Virus record (IMG/VR): IMGVR_UViG_3300047445_000186
Coordinates: 1-64,000 of that record
Length of the DNA: 64,000 bases
Direction: 5' to 3' (one strand)
How positions within the stretch are numbered: the stretch's first letter is position 1; each line of letters opens with the position of its first letter. A model generated the notes under the pieces. It saw only the letters and a list, made by a program, of their open reading frames with translations, did no database searches and was not told the DNA's origin. This document shows positions 1 to 48,757 of the stretch, piece after piece. Position numbers and translations under genes: made by a program.

Positions 1-141
1 GTAGTACACACCGCCATTCGAGCTGAACCGCAGATCGCCGAGATTGCACTTCCCTTTCATGCTCTTCACGTAAGCAGTGACCTTACGCTGAATTGCTTCG
101 AAGTCCTTCTCGTTCCGGGCTTTGACATCAACCAATTTCAT
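1..141 (-). CDS. hypothetical protein, 3' end runs off the window
   Basis: ATG at 141-139 with GGAGAA RBS on minus strand; MKLVDVKARNEKDFEAIQRKV... open to window edge. Confidence 0.6.
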   Translation of the reverse strand, partial: MKLVDVKARNEKDFEAIQRKVTAYVKSMKGKCNLGDLRFSSNGGVYY

Positions 142-170: not shown

Positions 171-401
171 TCACAACCCGAGACCGCCGAACGGGCTCTT
201 CGATGCTGCCTCAATCCGCTTGTTGATACTTTCGATCACCAGGTCACGTTCGAACGCAGACATGTTCAAGGCCGTCTCGTACGGCACGCCACCACGGGTG
301 TACGTAGCGATGTCGATCGCGGCCTGAATCAGGCCCTTGATTTCAATCTGCATTCGATCGATCATCTGAACGATTCTGGTGTGATCGCCAGTCAGAATCA
401 T
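171..401 (-). CDS. small baseplate/tail assembly protein (gp51-like or frameshift extension of upstream chaperone)
   Basis: 76 aa; YTRGGVPYETALNMSAFER motif; ATGA overlap with upstream gp26-like gene. Confidence 0.55.
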   Translation of the reverse strand: MILTGDHTRIVQMIDRMQIEIKGLIQAAIDIATYTRGGVPYETALNMSAFERDLVIESINKRIEAASKSPFGGLGL

Positions 402-1186
402 TCGGAGAAAAAAGATACAGGATTGAGCGGGAGCTCAACCTTCATCTCACCACCACAGTCCTTGCACTTCAGCGGCACGGTCTGCTCTGGTCCCCAACCG
501 TTCAACTCAGCCGCAGCTTCGTTGATTCGATTCACCATTGGCGATGTGAGCTTCCGGATCCATTCTTCGATGAACTTCGGATCAGTGACATCGTCAACCT
601 TCTCGACCATCGATACGAGATTGATCACGGCCATTTCCTTCACGTCTTCAGCCGTGAATTCCTTCTTGTTCGCTGAGCGATGGAACAGCTCGATCACGTC
701 CTTGAACTTCATCGGACGAGTGTACACCTTCTGACCGGTCACGAGCTCAACGACACGCTTCTCTTCGATCAGGGTTGGATCAAGCAGAACCATCTTCTGA
801 GCGAGCGCTTCGAGATCAACGACGTACGAGTGCTGCTTCGCTTCAGCACAGTCGTGCTTCACTTCAATTCGATACTCCGAACCGTACGTCACGAGGCGTA
901 GGAAGAACAGGAGCGCGTCGATGTCGCGGCCAAAGAGCTCAAGCGGCTTCTTGATCGACGGAACGCAATCAGCCATCACGGCCTCGAGCGCCTTCCCGTT
1001 GAACAGCAAGTCAGGATTCTTCAAATTGATTTCAGCCAGTGCAGTCATTGGGTGCACATGGATTTCGCCGTTCTTGGTAGACGAATCAAGCTCGCCGTTC
1101 ACGTACAGCGCTGCTCGGGATGGGAGCTGGAACGTTCTGCCTGGCAGTTTGATCTTTGCCAGGAGTGGATTTGTGGTGTCGGACAT
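398..1186 (-). CDS. T4 gp26-like baseplate hub / tail assembly chaperone
   Basis: 262 aa; LPSRAALY, DIDALLFFLRLVTYG, C-terminal CKDC...LNPVSFF typical of gp26 family. Confidence 0.75.
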   Translation of the reverse strand: MSDTTNPLLAKIKLPGRTFQLPSRAALYVNGELDSSTKNGEIHVHPMTALAEINLKNPDLLFNGKALEAVMADCVPSIKKPLELFGRDIDALLFFLRLVTYGSEYRIEVKHDCAEAKQHSYVVDLEALAQKMVLLDPTLIEEKRVVELVTGQKVYTRPMKFKDVIELFHRSANKKEFTAEDVKEMAVINLVSMVEKVDDVTDPKFIEEWIRKLTSPMVNRINEAAAELNGWGPEQTVPLKCKDCGGEMKVELPLNPVSFFSE

Positions 1187-1260: not shown

Positions 1261-4119
1261 ATGGCAATCGACAACGACATTCTTAAAACACTGCAGAGCA
1301 TTGAGAAGCTTCTCAAGAGCACGTCGTCTGCTGCTTCCGGTAAGTCAACGTTCTCTCAGAAATTCGACAAGATCCGCGGGAAGAAACAAGACGATAACTC
1401 TGGCGACGGTAAGACCTTCCAAGCTTTCACGAAGAGCATGGATAAGGCTGATGACGCTCTGCTTGGACTGTCAAGCAATCTGTCTGGCTTGAACAAGGAA
1501 GTCGGCAGAACGACGTCTGGATTCAGCGCTCTGAATGCGCAGATGTCGAAGTTCATGTCGGCTCTGCAAGTCACGCCACCAGGTGTGACACAAGCTGCAG
1601 GCGCTCCGAGAACTCGTATCCCTGGTAAGAACGGGCTTGGCGGTGTCGCACCAGGTATCACGATTCCAGCTCCAGCGGCAGGTGTAGGCGCTGCCTCGCC
1701 AATGAAGCAAGTCATGGGGCGGATGCTTCAGAACTTCGGTCAAGCATCTGTTGGTTCTGGCGGCCTTGCACTCGCATTCGGCGCTCTGATTGACGCAACG
1801 AAGCGTGTCACTGGCGAGTACTTTAATTTGGCTGAAATGGGCATGGGCTCAGTCAGCAATCTGGCGACACTCTCTAAGAACGCGCTGATGTCGGGCATGG
1901 CTCTGAAAGAGTACACGGCCCTGATCGGTTCGAGCATTAATGTCGCTTCCCGCGCCGGCAATCTTGAGAACTTCCAGAAGATCATCTCGGCGCAGGATGC
2001 CCAGCTCGCAGCAATGGGCGTGTTCGGTGCTGAAGCCCGCGCGATGCAGGCTTCGCTGGCCCAGAGCTCGGCGCAGCTTGGCGTTCCGATCGGTGATCTG
2101 ACGAAGGCAACTTCATCGCAGATCGACATCTTTGATAAGCTCCGCAAGTCGTCGAACATGACGGCTTCTGAGTTCGCAAGCATGACTCGTTCTGTTGCGA
2201 ACAGTGAAGAAGCTCAGAAGGAGCTGCTTGGACTGGCGCCATCAGAACGTATCGCTCGCATGAATCAGCTCGTGCAGCTGAACAGCATCGGTACGAAGAT
2301 GGGTATGGCTGCTGACGCTTCCGCGAAGCTCGGCCAGGCTCTGATGGCGGCACGTCAATCGACCGTCAAGGAACGTATCGACACTTCCGGCCTGATGTTG
2401 CAGATGGGTGCGTTCACTGGGAACGGCGCCGCTGGCCAACGTGGCATGGAACTTCAAATGAAGGGCCGCCGCCGCACAGAGGCTGAAGACGAAGAACTGC
2501 TGCAGATCTCGCAGACCTTTGAGCGTTCTGCTCAGACGATGTACCAGCAGGGTTCGCTTGGCGTTCAGAATGTTCTTGATCAGTTCGAAGAACAATCCTC
2601 AAAGGGTGCGTACGGCCAGATGGTCAAGGCTGGCCGAGGAAAGTCGCTCGCTGAAGATACTGGCACGGTAAATCAAGTTGCGTTCGGACAGCACGTTGGT
2701 GAATTCGGCCAGGCAGTTGGTAAGCTCACTTCACTGTTCAACGGTTTCGAACAGAGTGTTCTCGGCCCACTCGTCGCAGGTCTTGGTGGTGGTCTGCTCA
2801 CGATGTTCCGCGGTCCAATCGTGAACATCCTGTCTAAGGCACTTGGATTCGGTGGTGGAGCAGCAAAGGCTGCAGGCGCAGTTGCTTCGGCCGCTGGAGG
2901 TGGTGGAGCTTCAGCTGCGTACGGCGCTGGCCAGGCAGTCGGTAAGACGATGTCTTATTTGTCAAATGCATTCTCGACAGGTAAGAGCGCAATTGCTGGA
3001 TACATCCAGAACGTAAGACTCTCGAGCGCAATCATCAAGGATGCTGGCGGCACGACAATGGAAGTCGTCGGTCAGGTCTTCAAGGATGGTATTACCGCAG
3101 TGAAGGGTAGCGGCACGATGATGGCGGACGGCATGAAGTCATTCACCTCAGTCCTGAAGGCATCCGCACCTGAAATGAAGGCAGCGTTCGTGGGTGGTCT
3201 TGATGTGCTCAAAGGTGGCGCGGGAATGCTCTGGACCGGTTTGAAGGGTATCACGAAGATCTTCGGCCCACTGAGCGGTCTGATTGATGCTGCGATCGAA
3301 ATGTTCACTGGCGATATGTCGGATGCGCTGAACCCAAGTGGCGGCGTATTCAACCGCATGGGCGGGATGATCACGGCATTCTTCACAGCAATTCCGAACA
3401 TGCTCATTGACGCGCTTGCGTTCGTGTTCGGTGATGAGAACATCCAGCCTCTGAAGCGCGGTTTTGACCTGATCGTCGGGTACATGAACTTCGCGATCAA
3501 GGACTTCCTCGCTCGTCTCGCAGGTGGTGCTGCTGACTTGATGGAATCGCTGCCATTCGTTGGCAAAGACTCTCGCATGGTCAAGATGCTGCGCGGTTGG
3601 CAGGATGGTCTGGTTGACTCGGCGACTGAGAACGTCGCGATGGTCGAGAAGCTTTGGGACAACAACAGCGCGACGATGGCCTCGATCTCGAAGGAGAACA
3701 AGGCAGTCGCTGACAAGCAATCAGCTACCTCAGAGCAAGCTGCCACGAAGGTCGTCGCTTCTCAGAGCAAGTTCAACAACGTGATGGAGGCCGGTGCAGT
3801 GACGGCCGCTTCTGTCTATGCCGACGCTGCAGCACTTGCTGCACCACAGGTTCAGGTTGCAAAACAGGTCAGCACGGCCCCTGTAAATACTGCTGATCAG
3901 CAGACCGCTCAGGCACAGGCCGCGGCTGCAACCCAACAACAGCAAGCTGCAACAGTGACGTCCGATCTGGCGTCGGTGATGCAGTCCATTCTACAAGTTC
4001 TACGTGAGAATCTGCCTCGTCAAACTGACAGCTCTGAAGCGCTGGTCAAGCTCGTTAAACCGCAGACCTCTTTCCAATCAGCAGAAGACGCCGCAAATCA
4101 ACTCTTGCGCCGCAGGTAA
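1261..4119 (+). CDS. putative tape measure protein
   Basis: 952 aa, Ala/Gly/Ser-rich helical low-complexity protein next to the tail chaperone gene. Confidence 0.65.
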   Translation: MAIDNDILKTLQSIEKLLKSTSSAASGKSTFSQKFDKIRGKKQDDNSGDGKTFQAFTKSMDKADDALLGLSSNLSGLNKEVGRTTSGFSALNAQMSKFMSALQVTPPGVTQAAGAPRTRIPGKNGLGGVAPGITIPAPAAGVGAASPMKQVMGRMLQNFGQASVGSGGLALAFGALIDATKRVTGEYFNLAEMGMGSVSNLATLSKNALMSGMALKEYTALIGSSINVASRAGNLENFQKIISAQDAQLAAMGVFGAEARAMQASLAQSSAQLGVPIGDLTKATSSQIDIFDKLRKSSNMTASEFASMTRSVANSEEAQKELLGLAPSERIARMNQLVQLNSIGTKMGMAADASAKLGQALMAARQSTVKERIDTSGLMLQMGAFTGNGAAGQRGMELQMKGRRRTEAEDEELLQISQTFERSAQTMYQQGSLGVQNVLDQFEEQSSKGAYGQMVKAGRGKSLAEDTGTVNQVAFGQHVGEFGQAVGKLTSLFNGFEQSVLGPLVAGLGGGLLTMFRGPIVNILSKALGFGGGAAKAAGAVASAAGGGGASAAYGAGQAVGKTMSYLSNAFSTGKSAIAGYIQNVRLSSAIIKDAGGTTMEVVGQVFKDGITAVKGSGTMMADGMKSFTSVLKASAPEMKAAFVGGLDVLKGGAGMLWTGLKGITKIFGPLSGLIDAAIEMFTGDMSDALNPSGGVFNRMGGMITAFFTAIPNMLIDALAFVFGDENIQPLKRGFDLIVGYMNFAIKDFLARLAGGAADLMESLPFVGKDSRMVKMLRGWQDGLVDSATENVAMVEKLWDNNSATMASISKENKAVADKQSATSEQAATKVVASQSKFNNVMEAGAVTAASVYADAAALAAPQVQVAKQVSTAPVNTADQQTAQAQAAAATQQQQAATVTSDLASVMQSILQVLRENLPRQTDSSEALVKLVKPQTSFQSAEDAANQLLRRR
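3884..3889 (+). promoter_or_regulatory. late promoter TAAATA (portal)
   Basis: motif 240 nt upstream of the portal start, inside the tape measure CDS. Confidence 0.4.
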
Positions 4120-4128
4120 GGATATTTC

Positions 4129-5847
4129 ATGTCTCAAATGACTTCGTTCTGGCGCATCGTTGCTCCTAAGACACGTAAGCAACTGTACACAACGCTCAGC
4201 ACGGATGCGTACGATCCACGCTCGACAGATATGTCGTCCATGGCTGCAGTTACTTGGTACTCGCAGATCATGCGCGGGCCAGGTACTCGGATGGCTTCGT
4301 ACAAGCAGTACGACACAATGGATACCGACATCGACATCTCGCGTTCCCTCGACATTATCGCCGAAGAAATGTCCGGCAAGGATGACAAGACTGATCTGCC
4401 GTTCGTGATCAAGTGGCAGAAGGAAGACAACCAAGACGTGTCTGACACGACAGTTGTGACAGTTCGTGCTGCTCTTCGTCAGTGGGCGCAGATGCAGGAT
4501 CTGAAGAAGCGCGTGTTCAGCACGGCTCGAACGATGATCAAGTACGGTGATTGCTTCTTCCGCAAGGGTTCTGACACGCGTAAGTGGACGTACGTCGATC
4601 CATCGCTCGTGATTGGTATCGAGGTTGACGAGCTCGGCACGAAGGTCGCTTATCATGTGAAGCGTCCAGCTCAACAGCAACAGCAATCGCAGATGTACAC
4701 GACCCAGCGTATGGATGACGTTGACGTCGTTCCAGCGGCTGCGATGATTCACTTCTCGATGTGTGACGACATGGGCGACTCTGCTCCGTTCGGTCACTCA
4801 GTGCTGAAGCCAATCTTCCGTGTCTACCGTCAACTTTCGATGCTTGAAGATGCGGTGATCATTTACCGTATCGTTCGTGCTCCAGAACGCCGTGTGTTCT
4901 ACATCGACGTCGGGAACATGAACCAACAACAGGTCAAGCGTTACCTCGAGTCGGTCAAGAACGAAATCCGTCAGAAGCGCGCGCCAGGAACGACTGCTGG
5001 CGGCAAGGCTGAAGTTGACGGCCAATTCGATCCTACGTCGCTCCAAGAAGATTACTTCTTCCCAGTCACGGCTGCCGGTAAGGGTTCACGTGTTGAAACC
5101 CTGCCAGGCGGCACTGAAGACTTCGGTACGAATCTACTCCGCTCGTTCGCTGAGAAGATCTTCCGCGGTCTGCGTATTCCGACCTCGTACCTTGGCGGTC
5201 AAGAGGGTGCTGGCGCTCAGACGAACGACGGCAAGGTCGGTATCGCGTACATCGAAGAACTTCGGTTCGCGAACTTCATCACGCGTCTGCAAGACCGGAT
5301 GAACGAAATCTATGACCAAGAATTCAAGATCTACTTGAAGGTCTGTGGTCTCCGCATTGACGATGAAGTGTTCCAGGTCCGTCTGCCAGATCCAGCGAAC
5401 TTCGCGCTGTACCGTCAGGCTGCGCTCGATGCCGATCTGATTGCATCGTTCCAGAACATTCAGGAAGTTAAGTTCCTGTCGCGTCGCTTCATCTTGAAGC
5501 GTTACCTCGGTCTGACGGATGACGAAATCCAGATGAACGAAGTGATGATCAAGGAAGAGAAGAACATGTCTGACAACGCGATTGTGCCGATCATGCAGCA
5601 GATGTATGACGATGCAGTGTACGCGAATCGTGCCGAGATCACGGTTGACGGTGAGAACGTTGATCAAGGTGGCGGTGGTACTGACGAAGCTGGCGATCCA
5701 GGAGCAGGTCTCTTGGATAACGACTTCGAAGACAAGCCATTCGCATCAGCGCCTGATGAGTCTCCAGAGGCAGCTCCACCTGAAGGTGCTGATGAAACTG
5801 GTGCAGAACCACCAGCGGCAGGTGAAGAACCGCCAGCAGCCGGCTAA
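4129..5847 (+). CDS. portal protein (T4 gp20-like)
   Basis: LSMLEDAVIIYRIVRAPERRVFYIDVGNM, EDYFFP, VETLPGG signature motifs. Confidence 0.95.
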   Translation: MSQMTSFWRIVAPKTRKQLYTTLSTDAYDPRSTDMSSMAAVTWYSQIMRGPGTRMASYKQYDTMDTDIDISRSLDIIAEEMSGKDDKTDLPFVIKWQKEDNQDVSDTTVVTVRAALRQWAQMQDLKKRVFSTARTMIKYGDCFFRKGSDTRKWTYVDPSLVIGIEVDELGTKVAYHVKRPAQQQQQSQMYTTQRMDDVDVVPAAAMIHFSMCDDMGDSAPFGHSVLKPIFRVYRQLSMLEDAVIIYRIVRAPERRVFYIDVGNMNQQQVKRYLESVKNEIRQKRAPGTTAGGKAEVDGQFDPTSLQEDYFFPVTAAGKGSRVETLPGGTEDFGTNLLRSFAEKIFRGLRIPTSYLGGQEGAGAQTNDGKVGIAYIEELRFANFITRLQDRMNEIYDQEFKIYLKVCGLRIDDEVFQVRLPDPANFALYRQAALDADLIASFQNIQEVKFLSRRFILKRYLGLTDDEIQMNEVMIKEEKNMSDNAIVPIMQQMYDDAVYANRAEITVDGENVDQGGGGTDEAGDPGAGLLDNDFEDKPFASAPDESPEAAPPEGADETGAEPPAAGEEPPAAG

Positions 5848-5850
5848 ATA
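5845..5850 (+). promoter_or_regulatory. late promoter TAAATA
   Basis: overlaps portal stop, 27 nt before gp21. Confidence 0.6.
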
Positions 5851-5876
5851 CAGGACTATTAGGCTAAGGAGCACTC

Positions 5877-6485
5877 ATGCAGCTGTTGAAAGAATACCTC
5901 GATCCAAGCACCACCAATCTGACCGAAATGAAGAAGGTTGGCGGCGATCTCTACCTGTCTGGCATCATGATGCAAGCAGCACTGAAGAACGGCAATGGCC
6001 GCGTCTATCCAGTGAATGAAATCGCCCGTGCAGTTCAAGAGTGTCAAGACAAGATCACCAAGGGTAACTTCATCCTTGGCGAACTGAATCACCCAGACTC
6101 GTTGAGCATCAATCTCGCGAACGTTTCGCACGCTATCACTGAGATCCGCATGGACGGTAATAACGCTGTTGGCAAGATGAAGCTCTTGAACACGCCAGCT
6201 GGTAACATCGCAAAGGCTATCATCGAAGGCGGCGTTCGTCTTGGTGTTTCCTCGCGCGGTACCGGTAACGTGAACGAAGGCGGCGAAGTTGGTGACTTCT
6301 CGTTCGTCACAATGGACATCGTTTCTACTCCATCGGCTCCAGATGCATTCCCATCGGTAGTGCAAGAAGCTATGGGCTCGAAGAAGATTCTCTCGCTCGC
6401 TGAAGCTGTTGTTGTCGATCCAAAGGCACAGAAGTTCTTTGCGGCTGAGATCAAGAACCTGATCGCATCCCTCACAAAGAAGTAA
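5877..6485 (+). CDS. prohead core protease (T4 gp21-like)
   Basis: NGNGRVY, GELNHP (catalytic His), VSH, NTPAG, GVSSRG (catalytic Ser), DIVSTPSAP. Confidence 0.93.
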   Translation: MQLLKEYLDPSTTNLTEMKKVGGDLYLSGIMMQAALKNGNGRVYPVNEIARAVQECQDKITKGNFILGELNHPDSLSINLANVSHAITEIRMDGNNAVGKMKLLNTPAGNIAKAIIEGGVRLGVSSRGTGNVNEGGEVGDFSFVTMDIVSTPSAPDAFPSVVQEAMGSKKILSLAEAVVVDPKAQKFFAAEIKNLIASLTKK

Positions 6486-6488
6486 TCC

Positions 6489-7322
6489 ATGAAGCTCCTT
6501 CAAGAAATGCTGGGGCTGCTTGAAGCCTCGGCTAAGTTCGCAACTGATGCGGACGGTAATCTGATTCCAGCAAAGCTGCCTAAGCTCAGCCTTGGCGCGA
6601 TCAATGCAGCAATCTATCGTGTCGCAATCGCTTCGGTGAAGCTTCCAGCTGACGTGAAGGCTGACGCTCAGTTCACTGCAAAAGAAACAGATCGTTTCTT
6701 CAGCTCCCAGAACGACGAAGTGCTTTCGCAACTCGAGAAGTTCGCAGACGGCCGCGGGAACTATCAAGACGACGTGCTTGAAGCGTTCTACCGAGCGCTC
6801 GAAGATGTGGGTAACGAGATCATCGAGTACTACTCGAACAAAATGAATCACGCTCCAGGCTATCAAGCGCCAAAGATCGCTGCCTTCGATGCTGAAAAGG
6901 TTCCATCGTCCCGCGTGATCGCTGAGCTGAAGAAGTTCCCACACTGGGAAGAAGGTGTTCGCATTGAGAAGTGGACCGAGCAGAATCAAAAGAATGCGCG
7001 TAAAGCAAAGCACGCTTCTATGGTCTCTCCAGCGCTGATCGACAAGGTCGTGAAGGAATTCGACGCTCGCTTTGATGGCGAATTCACTGACAAGATCGCG
7101 AAAGAAATCACGCGCGATCCAGGCATGTTCGGCCTTCCAAATGGGTACGCTCCAAAGACTGGTGCAGAAGTTCGCGCCAAGATTCTTACATGGAAGCCAC
7201 GTGACATCATCGAGTGGATCATCGAGAACTCACGCAAGCTCAGCCACGATGAAATTTCTGCAGCCTTGAGCAGCAAGAAAACAGTCGACGCGATCTGGGC
7301 TAAGGTCTCCAAGGGTAAGTGA
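6489..7322 (+). CDS. hypothetical virion internal head protein
   Basis: 277 aa in head operon; N-terminus MKLLQEMLGLLEA resembles capsid-targeting/cleavage leader. Confidence 0.6.
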   Translation: MKLLQEMLGLLEASAKFATDADGNLIPAKLPKLSLGAINAAIYRVAIASVKLPADVKADAQFTAKETDRFFSSQNDEVLSQLEKFADGRGNYQDDVLEAFYRALEDVGNEIIEYYSNKMNHAPGYQAPKIAAFDAEKVPSSRVIAELKKFPHWEEGVRIEKWTEQNQKNARKAKHASMVSPALIDKVVKEFDARFDGEFTDKIAKEITRDPGMFGLPNGYAPKTGAEVRAKILTWKPRDIIEWIIENSRKLSHDEISAALSSKKTVDAIWAKVSKGK

Positions 7323-7337
7323 CCCAACCGGCCCCGG

Positions 7338-7343
7338 TAAATA
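7338..7343 (+). promoter_or_regulatory. late promoter TAAATA
   Basis: intergenic, upstream of small prohead core gene. Confidence 0.6.
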
Positions 7344-7375
7344 CTAACTTCATACAACAGACGAAAGGTACCGCT

Positions 7376-7543
7376 ATGAGCGATCCACGCGAACAACTGA
7401 AATCAATGCTTCAAGACCTGATCAATGATCGTCCAGAGCAAGCTTCTGCCACCATCCACGATTACATCGTGGCGAAGACGCAAGCCCTCGCAGGCTTTGC
7501 AGCTCCAGAAGCTGACGTTGATACTGAAGTCACCCCAGAGTGA
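7376..7543 (+). CDS. small acidic prohead core protein (gp67/gp68-like position)
   Basis: 55 aa MSDPREQLKSML..., GAAAGG RBS, sits between protease and scaffold. Confidence 0.55.
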   Translation: MSDPREQLKSMLQDLINDRPEQASATIHDYIVAKTQALAGFAAPEADVDTEVTPE

Positions 7544-7548
7544 TCACT

Positions 7549-7584
7549 ATGTGCTGAAAACATCCCCGTTTTCAGCACATTTTC
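7549..7584 (+). terminator. intrinsic terminator
   Basis: ATGTGCTGAAAAC-loop-GTTTTCAGCACAT followed by TTT. Confidence 0.65.
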
Positions 7585-7596
7585 CGAACTGCGCGC

Positions 7597-7602
7597 TAAA
7601 TA
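7597..7602 (+). promoter_or_regulatory. late promoter TAAATA (scaffold-capsid)
   Basis: intergenic, about 90 nt upstream of scaffold start. Confidence 0.65.
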
Positions 7603-7692
7603 CCACCACATGATAAAGAGTTGGTAACAACTTTAGTCACGCAGAAATTCAAATGTGGTAGCTTCATGCTACCGAAACTTAGGAGAAAGCTA

Positions 7693-8577
7693 ATGGACGA
7701 AATCCTGCAGAAACTGCTTCAGTCCGAGCTGCTCAGCGAAGAAACCAAAACTGAACTCTCCGAGCAATGGACCACTTCGGTCGAAGCCTACAAGACGCAA
7801 GTCCGTGAAGAAACTTCGCTCCAAGTTCGTTCGGAACTCGCAGAACAGTGGATCGGCGAACGCGACGAACTCGTCGCCAAGGTCGATGGTTTTGTGTCTG
7901 AAGCACTCATGAACGAAGTTGCTGAACTGAAGGCTGACATCGAGCGCTTCCGTGATCTCGAAGCTGAATACGCTGAAAAGATTGTTGAAGAGAAGCACAA
8001 GCTCGCAGAAGAAGTCGCATCTGAACTCGACCAACTGGTTGACAAGATCGATGCATTCTTCGAAGCACGCCTGAACGACGAACTCGATGAGCTCAAGGAA
8101 GACCTCGAAGTCGTGAAGCAAAACGAATTCGGTCGCAAGATCTACGAAGCATTCGCAAACACGTTCGCTGGCGCTCACATCGACGAATCGTCGATCGCTG
8201 GTAAGCTCAAGATTGCTGAAGCTAAGCTCGCAGATGCTACCTCCGCTCTTGCTGATTCGGAAGAATCCCGCTCGACGATGGTTCGCGAAGCAAAGATGAA
8301 CACGCTCCTCGCTAGCCTCACAGGCAAGAAGCGCGAAGCGATGGAAATGGTTCTCAAGAATGTCGAAACCGGCCGTCTTGAAGAGTCGTACAAGTTCTTT
8401 ATCGGTCGTGTCCTGAAGGAAGATGCTGCACCAGCTGCTGCTCTGACTGAAGGTAAGACGGTCGACAAGAAGACAACGGTTGTGACTGGTGACACGCAAG
8501 TCGAACAAGTCGCAAAACAACCTGCAGCCCTCAGTGAAAGCCTGCTCCAGCTGCAGCGCCTCGCCGGTATCAAGTAA
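7693..8577 (+). CDS. prohead scaffolding protein (T4 gp22-like)
   Basis: acidic coiled coil directly before MCP; AGGAGA RBS supports start 7693 rather than 7621. Confidence 0.85.
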   Translation: MDEILQKLLQSELLSEETKTELSEQWTTSVEAYKTQVREETSLQVRSELAEQWIGERDELVAKVDGFVSEALMNEVAELKADIERFRDLEAEYAEKIVEEKHKLAEEVASELDQLVDKIDAFFEARLNDELDELKEDLEVVKQNEFGRKIYEAFANTFAGAHIDESSIAGKLKIAEAKLADATSALADSEESRSTMVREAKMNTLLASLTGKKREAMEMVLKNVETGRLEESYKFFIGRVLKEDAAPAAALTEGKTVDKKTTVVTGDTQVEQVAKQPAALSESLLQLQRLAGIK

Positions 8578-47771: not shown

Positions 47772-47939
47772 ATGACATTCCTCGCAATTCTCCTGGGGCT
47801 GATCGTTGGTGGACTGTTCGGCTGCCTGCTTGGTTGGGTGTGGGCGCATAACACCGTGCTGAACGAAGCCAAAAAGCTTGGACGCTTCTACGTCGGGCCC
47901 GACGTGGTCGAGTGCACCGTGCATGAAGGAGCTCGATGA
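47772..47939 (+). CDS. small membrane protein
   Basis: 55 aa, N-terminal hydrophobic helix. Confidence 0.55.
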   Translation: MTFLAILLGLIVGGLFGCLLGWVWAHNTVLNEAKKLGRFYVGPDVVECTVHEGAR

Positions 47940-48535
47940 TGGAGTACGAGTGCTACCTCCTCAATCCGGACATGGAGCTCTGCCACATGGGCGAGAAGCT
48001 CTTCGAGACGGATGATTTGGCCGAAGCCTGCTCGTTCGTGTACAACTGGTACCAAGAGAAGAACGTGGATGTTTGCGTCTGGCAACCACGCACCAGCGGG
48101 TATCGCGAGTACTACAAGGTCGGCGAATGGCCGCCCTCGGCCGCGGCTCCCAAGGATCAAGTGACCGCGCCAGAGCCCGTGGATGCGGATGATCAGATCA
48201 AGCTCGATCACCCGCGCGCGATGTGGGAAATCCTCGTGCCAACGGAAAAGCGCCAACAACCAGGCGCGTTCTATCGGACTCGGTACCATCGCGTGTGGGA
48301 CGCGAAAGTCCGTGAAATTACTGGTGGTCTCACGATCCTCACGCCTGCCAAGGGGCAGTGGGTCAGCCCGAAAGGCGAGACGTTCACTGAGCGCATGATC
48401 CCCGTGCGGATCGTCGCCACCGAACCACAGATCAGCGAGATCATCGATCACACGCTGGAATACTATGACCAACTGGCAGTGCTCTGCTACAAGGTCAGCG
48501 ATCACGTCATTATTCGTCACAAGTCGGAGGTTTGA
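47936..48535 (+). CDS. two-domain hypothetical protein
   Basis: 199 aa; C-terminal GGLTILTPAKGQW..ERMIPVRI. Confidence 0.65.
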   Translation: MMEYECYLLNPDMELCHMGEKLFETDDLAEACSFVYNWYQEKNVDVCVWQPRTSGYREYYKVGEWPPSAAAPKDQVTAPEPVDADDQIKLDHPRAMWEILVPTEKRQQPGAFYRTRYHRVWDAKVREITGGLTILTPAKGQWVSPKGETFTERMIPVRIVATEPQISEIIDHTLEYYDQLAVLCYKVSDHVIIRHKSEV

Positions 48536-48757
48536 ATGGCAGCTCAGTATGTGTTCATGGTGAAGGGCCGCGGCGAGTTCCCAGTGGACATGCTTCGTCG
48601 CGATCAGTGCTATCCGTACCGAACGGAAGATGCGCACGCCATTCTCGGCGATGCAACCACGAAGGAACGTGAAGGCGTGTTCGTCTCGCCCCGCCCTCCG
48701 AACATCGATCGTTGGGCAAGCTTCGGCTGGCAGGTTCAAAGGACCTGCACCGTCTAA
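48536..48757 (+). CDS. hypothetical protein
   Basis: FPVDMLRRDQCYP..RWASFGW small phage family pattern. Confidence 0.65.
   Translation: MAAQYVFMVKGRGEFPVDMLRRDQCYPYRTEDAHAILGDATTKEREGVFVSPRPPNIDRWASFGWQVQRTCTV

What the first reader, a model, noticed from the sequence alone, without database searches (positions are those of the whole stretch)
398..413. Candidate programmed -1 frameshift fusing the gp26-like gene to the 76-aa ORF
Seen on the minus strand: GTA TCT TTT TTC TCC GAA TGA contains a correctly phased slippery heptamer T-TTT-TTC (413-407). A -1 shift reads TTT TTT CTC CGA ATG ATT, entering the 171-401 ORF with no stop. Established: tail assembly chaperones next to tape-measure genes often make G/GT products by -1 frameshifting. 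Here the pair is transcribed divergently from the tape measure gene.
Basis: partly seen in the sequence, partly recalled or inferred. Interest (0 to 1): 0.6.

Follow-up and report, generated by a model that had tools for sequence, protein, structure and literature searches.

The report
Conserved -1 frameshift in tail chaperone
A jumbo phage's T4 gp26-like tail/baseplate-hub assembly chaperone gene carries a slippery T TTT TTC site, conserved across its relatives, that very probably lets ribosomes slip back one base to make a second, longer protein, which is the usual trick of phage tail assembly chaperones but is missing from public annotations of these phages.

Summary
On the minus strand, T TTT TTC (413-407) lies in phase four codons before the stop of a 262-aa gp26-like gene (398-1186, PF12322). 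The -1 frame stays open through the 76-aa ORF (171-401).

Comparison with relatives supports a programmed -1 frameshift:
- 70 of 72 distinct homologous genes (24-100% identity) keep T TTT TTY in the same phase. Codon usage alone predicts about 18%.
- The -1 frame is always open for 75-84 codons and is conserved as protein from the slip site onward.
- 18 of 70 distinct extensions have no start codon before codon 12. RsoM2USA and PA5oct are examples.
- A hairpin 5 nt downstream shows compensatory changes within the window's clade.
- Contigs from four independent metagenome runs show no indel at the site.

The predicted fold's best solved matches are tail assembly chaperones (YqbN, HK97), but the scores are modest. 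The extension's C-terminal half matches the C-terminus of T4 gp51, which is a longer gp26 paralogue. The short and long products therefore correspond to T4 gp26 and gp51.

Classical T4-like phages lack the site. This is a new member of a known kind: papers citing Vladimirov et al. 2022 attribute gp26-type chaperones and poly-T signals to it. I found no experimental, RNA or peptide evidence for the long product. None of the seven relatives' records read at this locus annotates the frameshift.

The parts
398..1186 (-). gp26-like tail/hub assembly chaperone gene. The zero-frame product is 262 aa (the short form, TAC-N). Stop TGA at 400-398.
   Evidence: ORF. PF12322 at 1.8e-11 and phrog_150 at 1.4e-13. 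It is the only PF12322 match in the 331,776-bp record. AF2 model pLDDT 86. The best solved matches are YqbN 3klu Z 6.0, HK97 tail assembly chaperone 2ob9 Z 5.9 and 3fgx Z 5.5. Foldseek gives 2ob9 a probability of 0.90.
407..413 (-). Slippery heptamer T TTT TTC (U UUU UUC), in phase with the zero frame, at the conserved N-P-x-x-F-F motif.
   Evidence: 70 of 72 distinct homologous genes carry T TTT TTY in the same phase, against about 18% expected from codon usage. The Ser codon before it switches between TCT and AGT but always ends in T.
368..403 (-). Downstream stem-loop. It has an 11-bp lower stem plus 2 inner pairs in the window, and the conserved core is 370-401. The conserved stem starts 5 nt after the heptamer. 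The 5' arm contains the zero-frame stop and the ATG of the 76-aa ORF.
   Evidence: Fold. On the clade alignment A2, 98% of cells are paired, 5 of 11 pairs have compensatory changes, and 0 of 500 shuffles reach the observed value. Slid controls give 22-54% paired. A sister clade has a different hairpin with a 6-nt spacer.
171..407 (-). -1 frame extension of 78 codons plus the stop at 173-171. It includes the 76-aa ORF that starts at ATG 401-399. It is the C-terminal part of the long form (TAC-NC, about 338 aa).
   Evidence: In all relatives with enough sequence the -1 frame is open for 75-84 codons, and homology begins at the slip site. AF2 predicts a small helical domain, pLDDT 86. phrog_18291 at 1.5e-4. 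Positions 41-76 match the C-terminus of the T4 gp51 family.
1261..4119 (+). Divergently transcribed 952-aa tape-measure-like protein, the presumed client of the chaperone.
   Evidence: ORF. No Pfam or PHROG hit. 23 of 30 named Atlas neighbours are tape measure clusters at score 0.94, which is a lead only. The layout matches T4, where gene 26 is divergent from 51-27-28-29.

Best explanation
This is a programmed -1 ribosomal frameshift site in the single tail/hub assembly chaperone gene of a roughly 332-kb jumbo myophage. Most ribosomes terminate at the TGA at 400-398 and make the 262-aa gp26-like protein. With Phe-tRNAs on UUU UUC, a fraction slip back one base on U UUU UUC, probably helped by the hairpin that begins 3-5 nt downstream. 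These ribosomes continue in the -1 frame for 78 codons and give a protein of about 338 aa, made of the chaperone body plus a small helical C-terminal domain. By homology and analogy the short form corresponds to T4 gp26 or lambda G, and the long form to T4 gp51 or lambda GT. Together they would chaperone the tape measure protein during hub and tail-tube initiation and would be absent from the finished virion. What is shown: the site, its phase, its conservation, the open conserved -1 frame, the covarying hairpin, and the family and fold relations. What is inferred: that slipping occurs, its efficiency, and the division of labour between the two products.
For: (1) The heptamer is in phase.
(2) 70 of 72 distinct homologues, from 100% down to 24% identity, keep T TTT TTY in phase against about 18% expected. 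Background Phe codons are TTT 369 and TTC 478, and Ser switches between TCT and AGT.
(3) The -1 frame is always open for 75-84 codons. Its protein is as conserved as the main gene (47% mean column identity each) and aligns from the slip site onward.
(4) 18 of 70 distinct extensions have no ATG, GTG or TTG before codon 12. In RsoM2USA the first is at codon 47 and the stretch is unannotated. PA5oct and PAC2 have none.
(5) Conserved, covarying hairpins with 5-6-nt spacers are found in two subclades. Stability downstream of the site is higher than in the gene body (mean -13.4 against -8.1 kcal/mol).
(6) The run always starts at the same codon position although its length varies from 6 to 9. A ribosome needs that phase; a polymerase does not.
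(7) The top three of 48,161 solved chains include two tail-assembly-chaperone structures.
(8) T4 gp51 is PF12322 plus a C-terminal tail. The extension profile hits 91 gp51 homologues at their C-terminus, ahead of all 481 background ORFs, and hhalign gives E 8e-5.
(9) The genome has a single PF12322 gene, so a long form has no other source.
(10) Homologues were not found in XacN1 and RaK2 virions (PMC5852040).
(11) There is no indel in four independent DNA assemblies.
Against: There is no protein, ribosome-profiling or RNA evidence: no RNA run holds the locus. In the window's clade an ATG sits 2 codons after the slip site in ATGA overlap with the stop, so the 76-aa ORF could also, or instead, be made by termination-reinitiation. 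44 of 70 distinct extensions have a start codon within 6 codons. Two distinct relatives (L063; L043/L044) have TCT TTC TTC, which is not a canonical heptamer. No strong hairpin is conserved in the more distant clades. Structural matches to chaperones are modest (Z about 6; Foldseek E 0.38). The gene is not in the canonical position between the tube and tape measure genes. The host and the efficiency of U UUU UUC in it are unknown.
Confidence: 0.85

Rival explanations
1. There are two ordinary genes. The 76-aa ORF is translated separately from its own ATG by termination-reinitiation at the ATGA overlap, and no fusion protein is made.
For: The ATG at 401-399 overlaps the TGA stop. 44 of 70 distinct relatives have a start codon within 6 codons of the slip site. 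Public records that annotate the small ORF treat it as a separate gene, for example Turkey5, XacN1 and RAS14.
Against: This does not explain the synonymous-site conservation of T TTT TTY in 70 of 72 genes. It does not explain the absence of any usable start codon in RsoM2USA, PA5oct and 18 of 70 distinct extensions, or the protein conservation upstream of the Met position. That position is V, I, L, F, T or R in other relatives. There is no Shine-Dalgarno sequence before the ATG, which sits inside the hairpin stem. Separate translation could still coexist with frameshifting in this clade.
Confidence: 0.07
2. The long product arises from transcriptional slippage: RNA polymerase adds one U in the T run. 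The ribosome does not slip.
For: The site is a homopolymer. A few relatives have runs long enough for polymerase slippage, T8 in four and T9 in RsoM2USA.
Against: 60 of 70 relatives, including the window, have only T6. By my own knowledge that is short for efficient bacterial RNA polymerase slippage. The run always begins at the third position of the codon before Phe-Phe, a phase that matters only to the ribosome. A structured element sits at the classical 5-6-nt spacing.
Confidence: 0.06
3. The apparent frameshift is a homopolymer sequencing or assembly error, or a chance heptamer. The true gene would be one continuous ORF, or the heptamer would mean nothing.
For: Homopolymer runs are error-prone, and the window comes from a metagenome assembly.
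Against: Four independent assemblies agree with no indel. The same two-frame arrangement is seen in 70 or more distinct sequences, including isolate genomes. It is the only in-phase TTTTTTN in 28,843 ORF codons of the window.
Confidence: 0.01

Closest known systems
T4 gp26 / gp51 baseplate-hub assembly chaperones, identified as the tail assembly chaperones of T4-like phages by Vladimirov, Gautam and Davidson, Virology 2022, PMID 34826709. The paper was not readable here and is known only through citing papers PMC10885494 and PMC12846349.
   Same: They share a Pfam family (PF12322) and a PHROG (150). They share the conserved Cys pairs and the C-terminal F-F motif. The synteny is the same, divergent from the hub and tape measure genes. 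There is a short and a long form, and the long form ends in the M-x-x-x-E-R... tail shared with the extension. Citing papers say that poly-T -1 signals in the TAC-N genes of T4-like phages were described there.
   Different: T4 and the classical T4-like phages I read (KIT01, DP45, Acj9, B614) encode the two forms as two separate genes. They have no slippery heptamer (T4 uses TTC TTT), and gene 25 follows gene 26 directly. The window's genome has a single gene and must recode it. I could not check whether the jumbo RaK2/PA5oct/XacN1/RsoM2USA clade was covered by that paper.
Lambda G/GT and the conserved tail assembly chaperone frameshift (Levin et al. 1993; Xu, Hendrix and Duda 2004, cited in PMC9024508; details from my own knowledge)
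   Same: [quoted passage not shown] The heptamer is of the X XXY YYZ type. The products are assembly factors that are absent from virions. The fold resembles the HK97 chaperone.
   Different: The gene is not between the tail tube and tape measure genes and is transcribed away from the tape measure gene. The body is about twice as long, apparently two chaperone-like domains with a four-Cys motif. There is no detectable sequence similarity to G or T.
P2 E / E+E' in a contractile-tailed phage, with slip site T TTT TTG (from my own knowledge)
   Same: It is a myophage chaperone with a poly-T heptamer and a -1 extension.
   Different: It belongs to an unrelated sequence family, is small, and lies directly upstream of the tape measure gene.
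Pakpunavirus / Andersonviridae chaperone frameshift with a conserved GTTTTT motif (PMC12846349)
   Same: It is a poly-T -1 site at the 3' end of TAC-N, inferred from conservation. The downstream ORF is routinely mis-annotated as a separate hypothetical gene.
   Different: It is a different phage family with a different gene position. No relation to PF12322 was tested here.

Membership tests
T4 gp26/gp51 family (PF12322 T4_baseplate, phrog_150) | Profile match above the curated threshold | tested here: met
   PF12322 scores 44.6 bits against a cut-off of 24.5, E 1.8e-11, over residues 64-260. phrog_150 scores 1.4e-13. T4 gp26 and gp51 both fall in phrog_150.
T4 gp26/gp51 family (PF12322 T4_baseplate, phrog_150) | Conserved cysteine pairs (putative zinc ribbon) and a C-terminal Phe-Phe motif | tested here: met
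   C113, C241, C244, F259 and F260 are invariant and C74 is nearly invariant across 64 sequences. T4 gp26 has CxC ... CxxC and ends in EFFELL. Metal binding itself was not tested.
T4 gp26/gp51 family (PF12322 T4_baseplate, phrog_150) | Position next to, and divergent from, the hub / tape measure gene block | tested here: met
   In the window, 398-1186 (-) faces 1261-4119 (+). In T4, gene 26 (-) faces 51-27-28-29 (+).
T4 gp26/gp51 family (PF12322 T4_baseplate, phrog_150) | The long form carries the gp51-type C-terminal tail (the PF28602 region) | tested here: inconclusive
   hhalign of the extension (41-74) against the gp51 family (222-255) gives probability 61% and E 8e-5. The extension profile hits 91 gp51 homologues at residues of about 222-257, ahead of all 481 background ORFs, with a best E of 1.5e-4. 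The match is consistent but weak, and the local Pfam copy lacks PF28602.
Tail assembly chaperone with G/GT-type programmed -1 frameshift | [quoted passage not shown] | tested here: met
   70 of 72 distinct genes carry it.
Tail assembly chaperone with G/GT-type programmed -1 frameshift | A second ORF in the -1 frame, open from the slip site, conserved, and not dependent on its own start codon | tested here: met
   The frame is open for 75-84 codons in all relatives with enough sequence. 18 of 70 have no start before codon 12.
Tail assembly chaperone with G/GT-type programmed -1 frameshift | Gene located between the tail tube gene and the tape measure gene, on the same strand | tested here: not met
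   The gene is transcribed divergently from the tape-measure-like gene. This is the T4-type layout and not the lambda-type layout.
Tail assembly chaperone with G/GT-type programmed -1 frameshift | Chaperone fold (like HK97 2ob9 and YqbN 3klu) | tested here: inconclusive
   The top three VIA matches are 3klu Z 6.0, 2ob9 Z 5.9 and 3fgx Z 5.5, and the next is 4.1. Foldseek gives 2ob9 probability 0.90, TM 0.53 by target and E 0.38. The ranking is consistent, but Z below 8 is not decisive on its own.
Tail assembly chaperone with G/GT-type programmed -1 frameshift | Two products made in a fixed ratio, both needed for tail assembly, and absent from virions | not testable with these tools
   The only indirect evidence is that the homologues of XacN1 and RaK2 were not detected in virion MS (PMC5852040). 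PA5oct gp336 carries no MS note.
Transcriptional slippage site | A homopolymer long enough for polymerase slippage (about 8-9 or more), with no requirement for codon phase | tested here: not met
   The run is T6 in the window and in 60 of 70 relatives, and its phase is strictly conserved. The length threshold comes from my own knowledge.

The most novel reading that the evidence does not exclude
One recoded gene does in these jumbo phages what the gp26 + gp51 gene pair does in T4. On this reading the -1 frameshift is the ancestral state of the whole PF12322 chaperone family. It is retained from roughly 150-kb T4-like phages (LG08, LPCS28) up to the 490-kb Atu_ph07, and was replaced by duplication and a hard-wired fusion in the T-even lineage. 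Lineage-specific hairpins that bury the stop and the internal ATG tune the ratio of the two forms. For the RaK2/PA5oct/XacN1/RsoM2USA clade this may not have been described before, and none of the seven relatives' records I read at this locus annotates it.
Probability: 0.35. Interest if true: 0.5.

Novelty: new member of a known kind. Interest (0 to 1): 0.4.

Why it matters
The finding corrects the annotation of a core morphogenesis gene in this jumbo phage. The same correction applies to the cultured relatives read here, including the RefSeq records of PA5oct and Atu_ph07, where the extension is either called an orphan hypothetical gene or left unannotated. It gives gp51, long called an enigmatic 'hub assembly catalyst', a clear counterpart: the long form of a tail assembly chaperone. 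It also shows that the G/GT logic extends to T4-type baseplate hubs. Finally, it offers a compact natural test case (a U UUU UUC heptamer and a 5-nt spacer, with two alternative hairpins) for frameshift efficiency in non-model hosts.

Tried and rejected
- DNA-level search of the phage collection with 4.2 kb found nothing. Relatives are visible only at the protein level.
- Pfam gives nothing for the 76-aa ORF, and the profile search of solved structures gives nothing.
- Foldseek against PDB has no hit at E of 0.001 or better. Only the HK97 chaperone stands out, by probability.
- Foldseek of the extension against viral models finds only small unnamed phage proteins and a weak 'tape measure chaperone' of phage Moogle.
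- hhalign against single T4 sequences was uninformative. Profiles were needed.
- A search for T4 gp26 relatives in IMG/VR with one sequence returned only near-identical T4 copies. Six phage records were fetched instead.
- No RNA run holds the locus, so transcript-level tests were impossible.
- The key paper (PMID 34826709) is not held, so its content is quoted only through citing papers.
- No internal Shine-Dalgarno-like stimulator is seen 10-14 nt upstream of the heptamer.
- A second heptamer candidate, GGGCCCG at the end of the minus-strand ORF 47888-48739, was dismissed. That ORF and its neighbour have no family hits and overlap a plus-strand ORF.
- The large representative protein search, complex prediction and alternative genetic codes were not used because nothing required them.

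Full report
**What is in the sequence.** The window is the first 64 kb of a 331,776-bp IMG/VR virus record, estimated 94% complete. The same sequence occurs in rhizosphere metagenomes.

On the minus strand a 262-aa ORF (398..1186) ends ...CCT GTA TCT TTT TTC TCC GAA TGA. A 76-aa ORF (171..401) starts at the ATG that overlaps this TGA, so it lies in the -1 frame. The heptamer T TTT TTC (413-407) is in the X XXY YYZ phase. After a -1 slip the reading CTC CGA ATG ATT... stays open for 78 codons. This gives a conceptual 338-aa product.

The site is unusual within the window:
- It is the only in-phase TTTTTTN in 28,843 codons of long ORFs.
- It is one of only two T/A runs of 6 or more in 64 kb.
- The gene otherwise prefers TTC to TTT for Phe 10:1.
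- Contigs from four independent runs cover the site with no indel.

**What the genes are.** The 262-aa protein matches PF12322 (T4_baseplate, the gene 26 family) and phrog_150 'baseplate hub', and weakly matches a tail-assembly-chaperone PHROG. The divergent 952-aa neighbour has no family hit, but its nearest named Atlas clusters are tape measure proteins (a lead only). A T4-type portal and a prohead protease follow it.

Protein-level relatives are jumbo myophages. RsoM2USA is closest at 50% identity, followed by XacN1, RAS14, the RaK2-like and Eneladusvirus groups, PA5oct-like phages and Atu_ph07. They total 98 records.

**Comparative test of the frameshift.** I collected 80 IMG/VR loci with a profile of the protein and added phage records.
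- Of 72 distinct genes spanning 24-100% identity, 70 have T TTT TTY in phase at the conserved N-P-x-x-F-F motif. Each gene's own codon usage predicts a slip-compatible codon choice in about 18% of cases.
- The residue before Phe-Phe varies (S, N, T, A, D, V), but its codon always ends in T. Ser alternates between TCT and AGT.
- In every relative with enough sequence, the -1 frame is open for 75-84 codons from the slip site. The encoded peptide aligns without gaps from the first residue after the slip (consensus FFHRxI...SRG..Y..L.M..ER...IN.RL) and is as conserved as the main protein.
- 18 of 70 distinct extensions have no ATG, GTG or TTG before codon 12. In RsoM2USA the first is at codon 47, and the stretch lies in a 1.4-kb unannotated gap. 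In PA5oct and PAC2 there is none at all.
- The Met of the window's ATG is V, I, L, F, T or R elsewhere. It therefore behaves as an internal residue and not as a conserved initiator.
- Two distinct relatives (L063; L043/L044) have TCT TTC TTC instead. These are the only exceptions.

**RNA structure.** In the window a stable hairpin begins 3 nt after the heptamer. Its lower stem has 11 bp, and the 5' arm holds the stop codon and the ATG.

In the window's subclade of 15 sequences, a hairpin starting 5 nt after the heptamer is 98% paired. Five of its 11 pairs show compensatory changes. None of 500 shuffles reaches the observed values, and slid controls fall to 22-54% paired.

The sister subclade has a different hairpin at a 6-nt spacing, with one strongly covarying pair. 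More distant clades have no common strong structure, although the 50 nt after the site are on average more stable than the gene body.

The spacing, together with the fixed codon phase of a run whose length varies from 6 to 9, points to ribosomal slippage rather than polymerase slippage.

**Fold and relation to known chaperones.** An AF2 model of the 262-aa protein (64-sequence alignment, pLDDT 86) was aligned against 48,161 solved chains. The top three matches were B. subtilis YqbN (3klu, Z 6.0), the HK97 tail assembly chaperone (2ob9, Z 5.9) and 3fgx (Z 5.5). The next match was Z 4.1. Foldseek singles out 2ob9 with probability 0.90.

The matches fall on two parts of the model, roughly residues 1-110 and 136-236, which suggests two chaperone-like domains. 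The scores are modest, so I treat the fold as supporting evidence only. The extension folds as a small helical domain, pLDDT 86.

**Relation to T4.**
- T4 gp26 is 208 aa and ends EFFELL, encoded TTC TTT. Gene 25 follows it directly.
- KIT01, DP45, Acj9 and B614 are alike in this respect, so the classical T4-like phages read here have no frameshift.
- T4 gp51, the 'hub assembly catalyst' next door, is itself a PF12322 protein (residues 1-201, 3.9e-52) with an extra C-terminal tail (PF28602 in precomputed tables). phrog_150 covers gp26 over positions 14-235 and gp51 over 13-280.
- A profile of the window's extension matches the extreme C-terminus of the gp51 family, with hhalign E 8e-5 and probability 61%.
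- An hmmsearch of a mixed set hit 91 gp51 homologues at residues of about 222-257. All of them ranked above all 481 background ORFs of the window, and gp26 was not hit.

The frameshift product is therefore the likely counterpart of gp51 and the zero-frame product that of gp26. The window's genome has only one PF12322 gene.

Two smaller T4-like phages, Rhizobium LG08 and Cronobacter LPCS28, also have T TTT TTC with a -1 extension of 57-62 codons. The recoded arrangement is thus widespread in this protein family and not restricted to jumbo phages.

**What is already known.** Tail assembly chaperone frameshifting is classical. Vladimirov, Gautam and Davidson (Virology 2022, PMID 34826709) identified the chaperones of T4-like phages, but I could not read the paper.

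Two citing papers describe its content. PMC10885494 says that some T4-like phages carry a short gene and a fused long gene instead of frameshifting. PMC12846349 says that poly-T -1 signals are known in the TAC-N genes of T4-like phages.

The jumbo-phage papers I checked (PA5oct, XacN1) do not mention a frameshift. The XacN1 paper also reports that the hub protein was not found in XacN1 or RaK2 virions, as expected for a chaperone. None of the seven relatives' records I read at this locus annotates a joined CDS.

**Verdict.** I put the probability of a functional -1 recoding event at this site at about 0.85.

Three things remain open: the efficiency of slipping, any contribution of independent initiation at the ATG in this clade, and direct proof of the protein. 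In kind it is a new member of a known class. It has practical value for annotation and for understanding gp26 and gp51.

Noticed in passing
L001 (Ralstonia phage RsoM2USA) 3296-4696: There is a 1.4-kb stretch with no annotated gene downstream of the gp26-like CDS. Its first 240 nt encode the homologue of the extension in the -1 frame with no start codon. The T run here is nine long, so polymerase slippage or a homopolymer miscount should be checked in this record.
   Followed up: partly
L085 (Pseudomonas phage PAC2) 2315-2446; L087 (PA5oct RefSeq) 2029-2251: In PAC2 the extension region is annotated as a 43-aa hypothetical protein on the opposite strand. In PA5oct RefSeq it is left empty. Both look like annotation gaps caused by the missing start codon.
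   Followed up: partly
L063 2283-2295; L043/L044 2262-2274: Two distinct metagenomic relatives have TCT TTC TTC instead of T TTT TTC, while keeping the open, conserved -1 extension. L043/L044 also lack a nearby start codon. This could mean a lower-efficiency P-site slip, loss of the frameshift, or an assembly variant.
   Followed up: no
L100 (Rhizobium phage LG08) 1270-1460; L101 (Cronobacter phage LPCS28, Straboviridae) 1265-1440: Smaller T4-like phages of 150-183 kb carry the same T TTT TTC at the end of their gp26 homologue, with a shorter -1 extension of 57-62 codons. The recoding is therefore not limited to jumbo phages.
   Followed up: partly
window 398-1186 (-), protein residues 1-110 and 136-236: The gp26-like protein seems to consist of two chaperone-like domains. 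Its C-terminal half (145-255, with the CxxC) aligns to the N-terminal 6-99 of the gp51 family. This hints at an internal duplication.
   Followed up: no
L060, L019-L031 and relatives (alignment A3), 6 nt after the heptamer: The sister clade uses a different downstream hairpin. The same 5' arm (ATGATCAT) pairs with a more distal partner and encloses a second inner stem, so the stimulatory structure has been remodelled between clades.
   Followed up: partly
window 1-141 (-): The next gene downstream of the extension is cut by the start of the contig (47 aa seen) and has no family hit. The window begins at the end of the virus record.
   Followed up: no
window 47888-48739 (-): An in-phase GGGCCCG lies 3 codons before the stop of a 283-aa minus-strand ORF, with a long open -1 frame. 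The ORFs have no family hits and overlap a plus-strand ORF with a weak PHROG hit, so the ORF is probably spurious.
   Followed up: partly
window 4129-8577 (+): This is a T4-type head module directly after the tape-measure-like gene: portal (PF07230, 1.3e-84), head maturation protease (phrog_207, 5e-56), then a 277-aa, a 74-aa and a 318-aa (phrog_10922) protein. The whole 64-kb window has no tRNA genes.
   Followed up: partly
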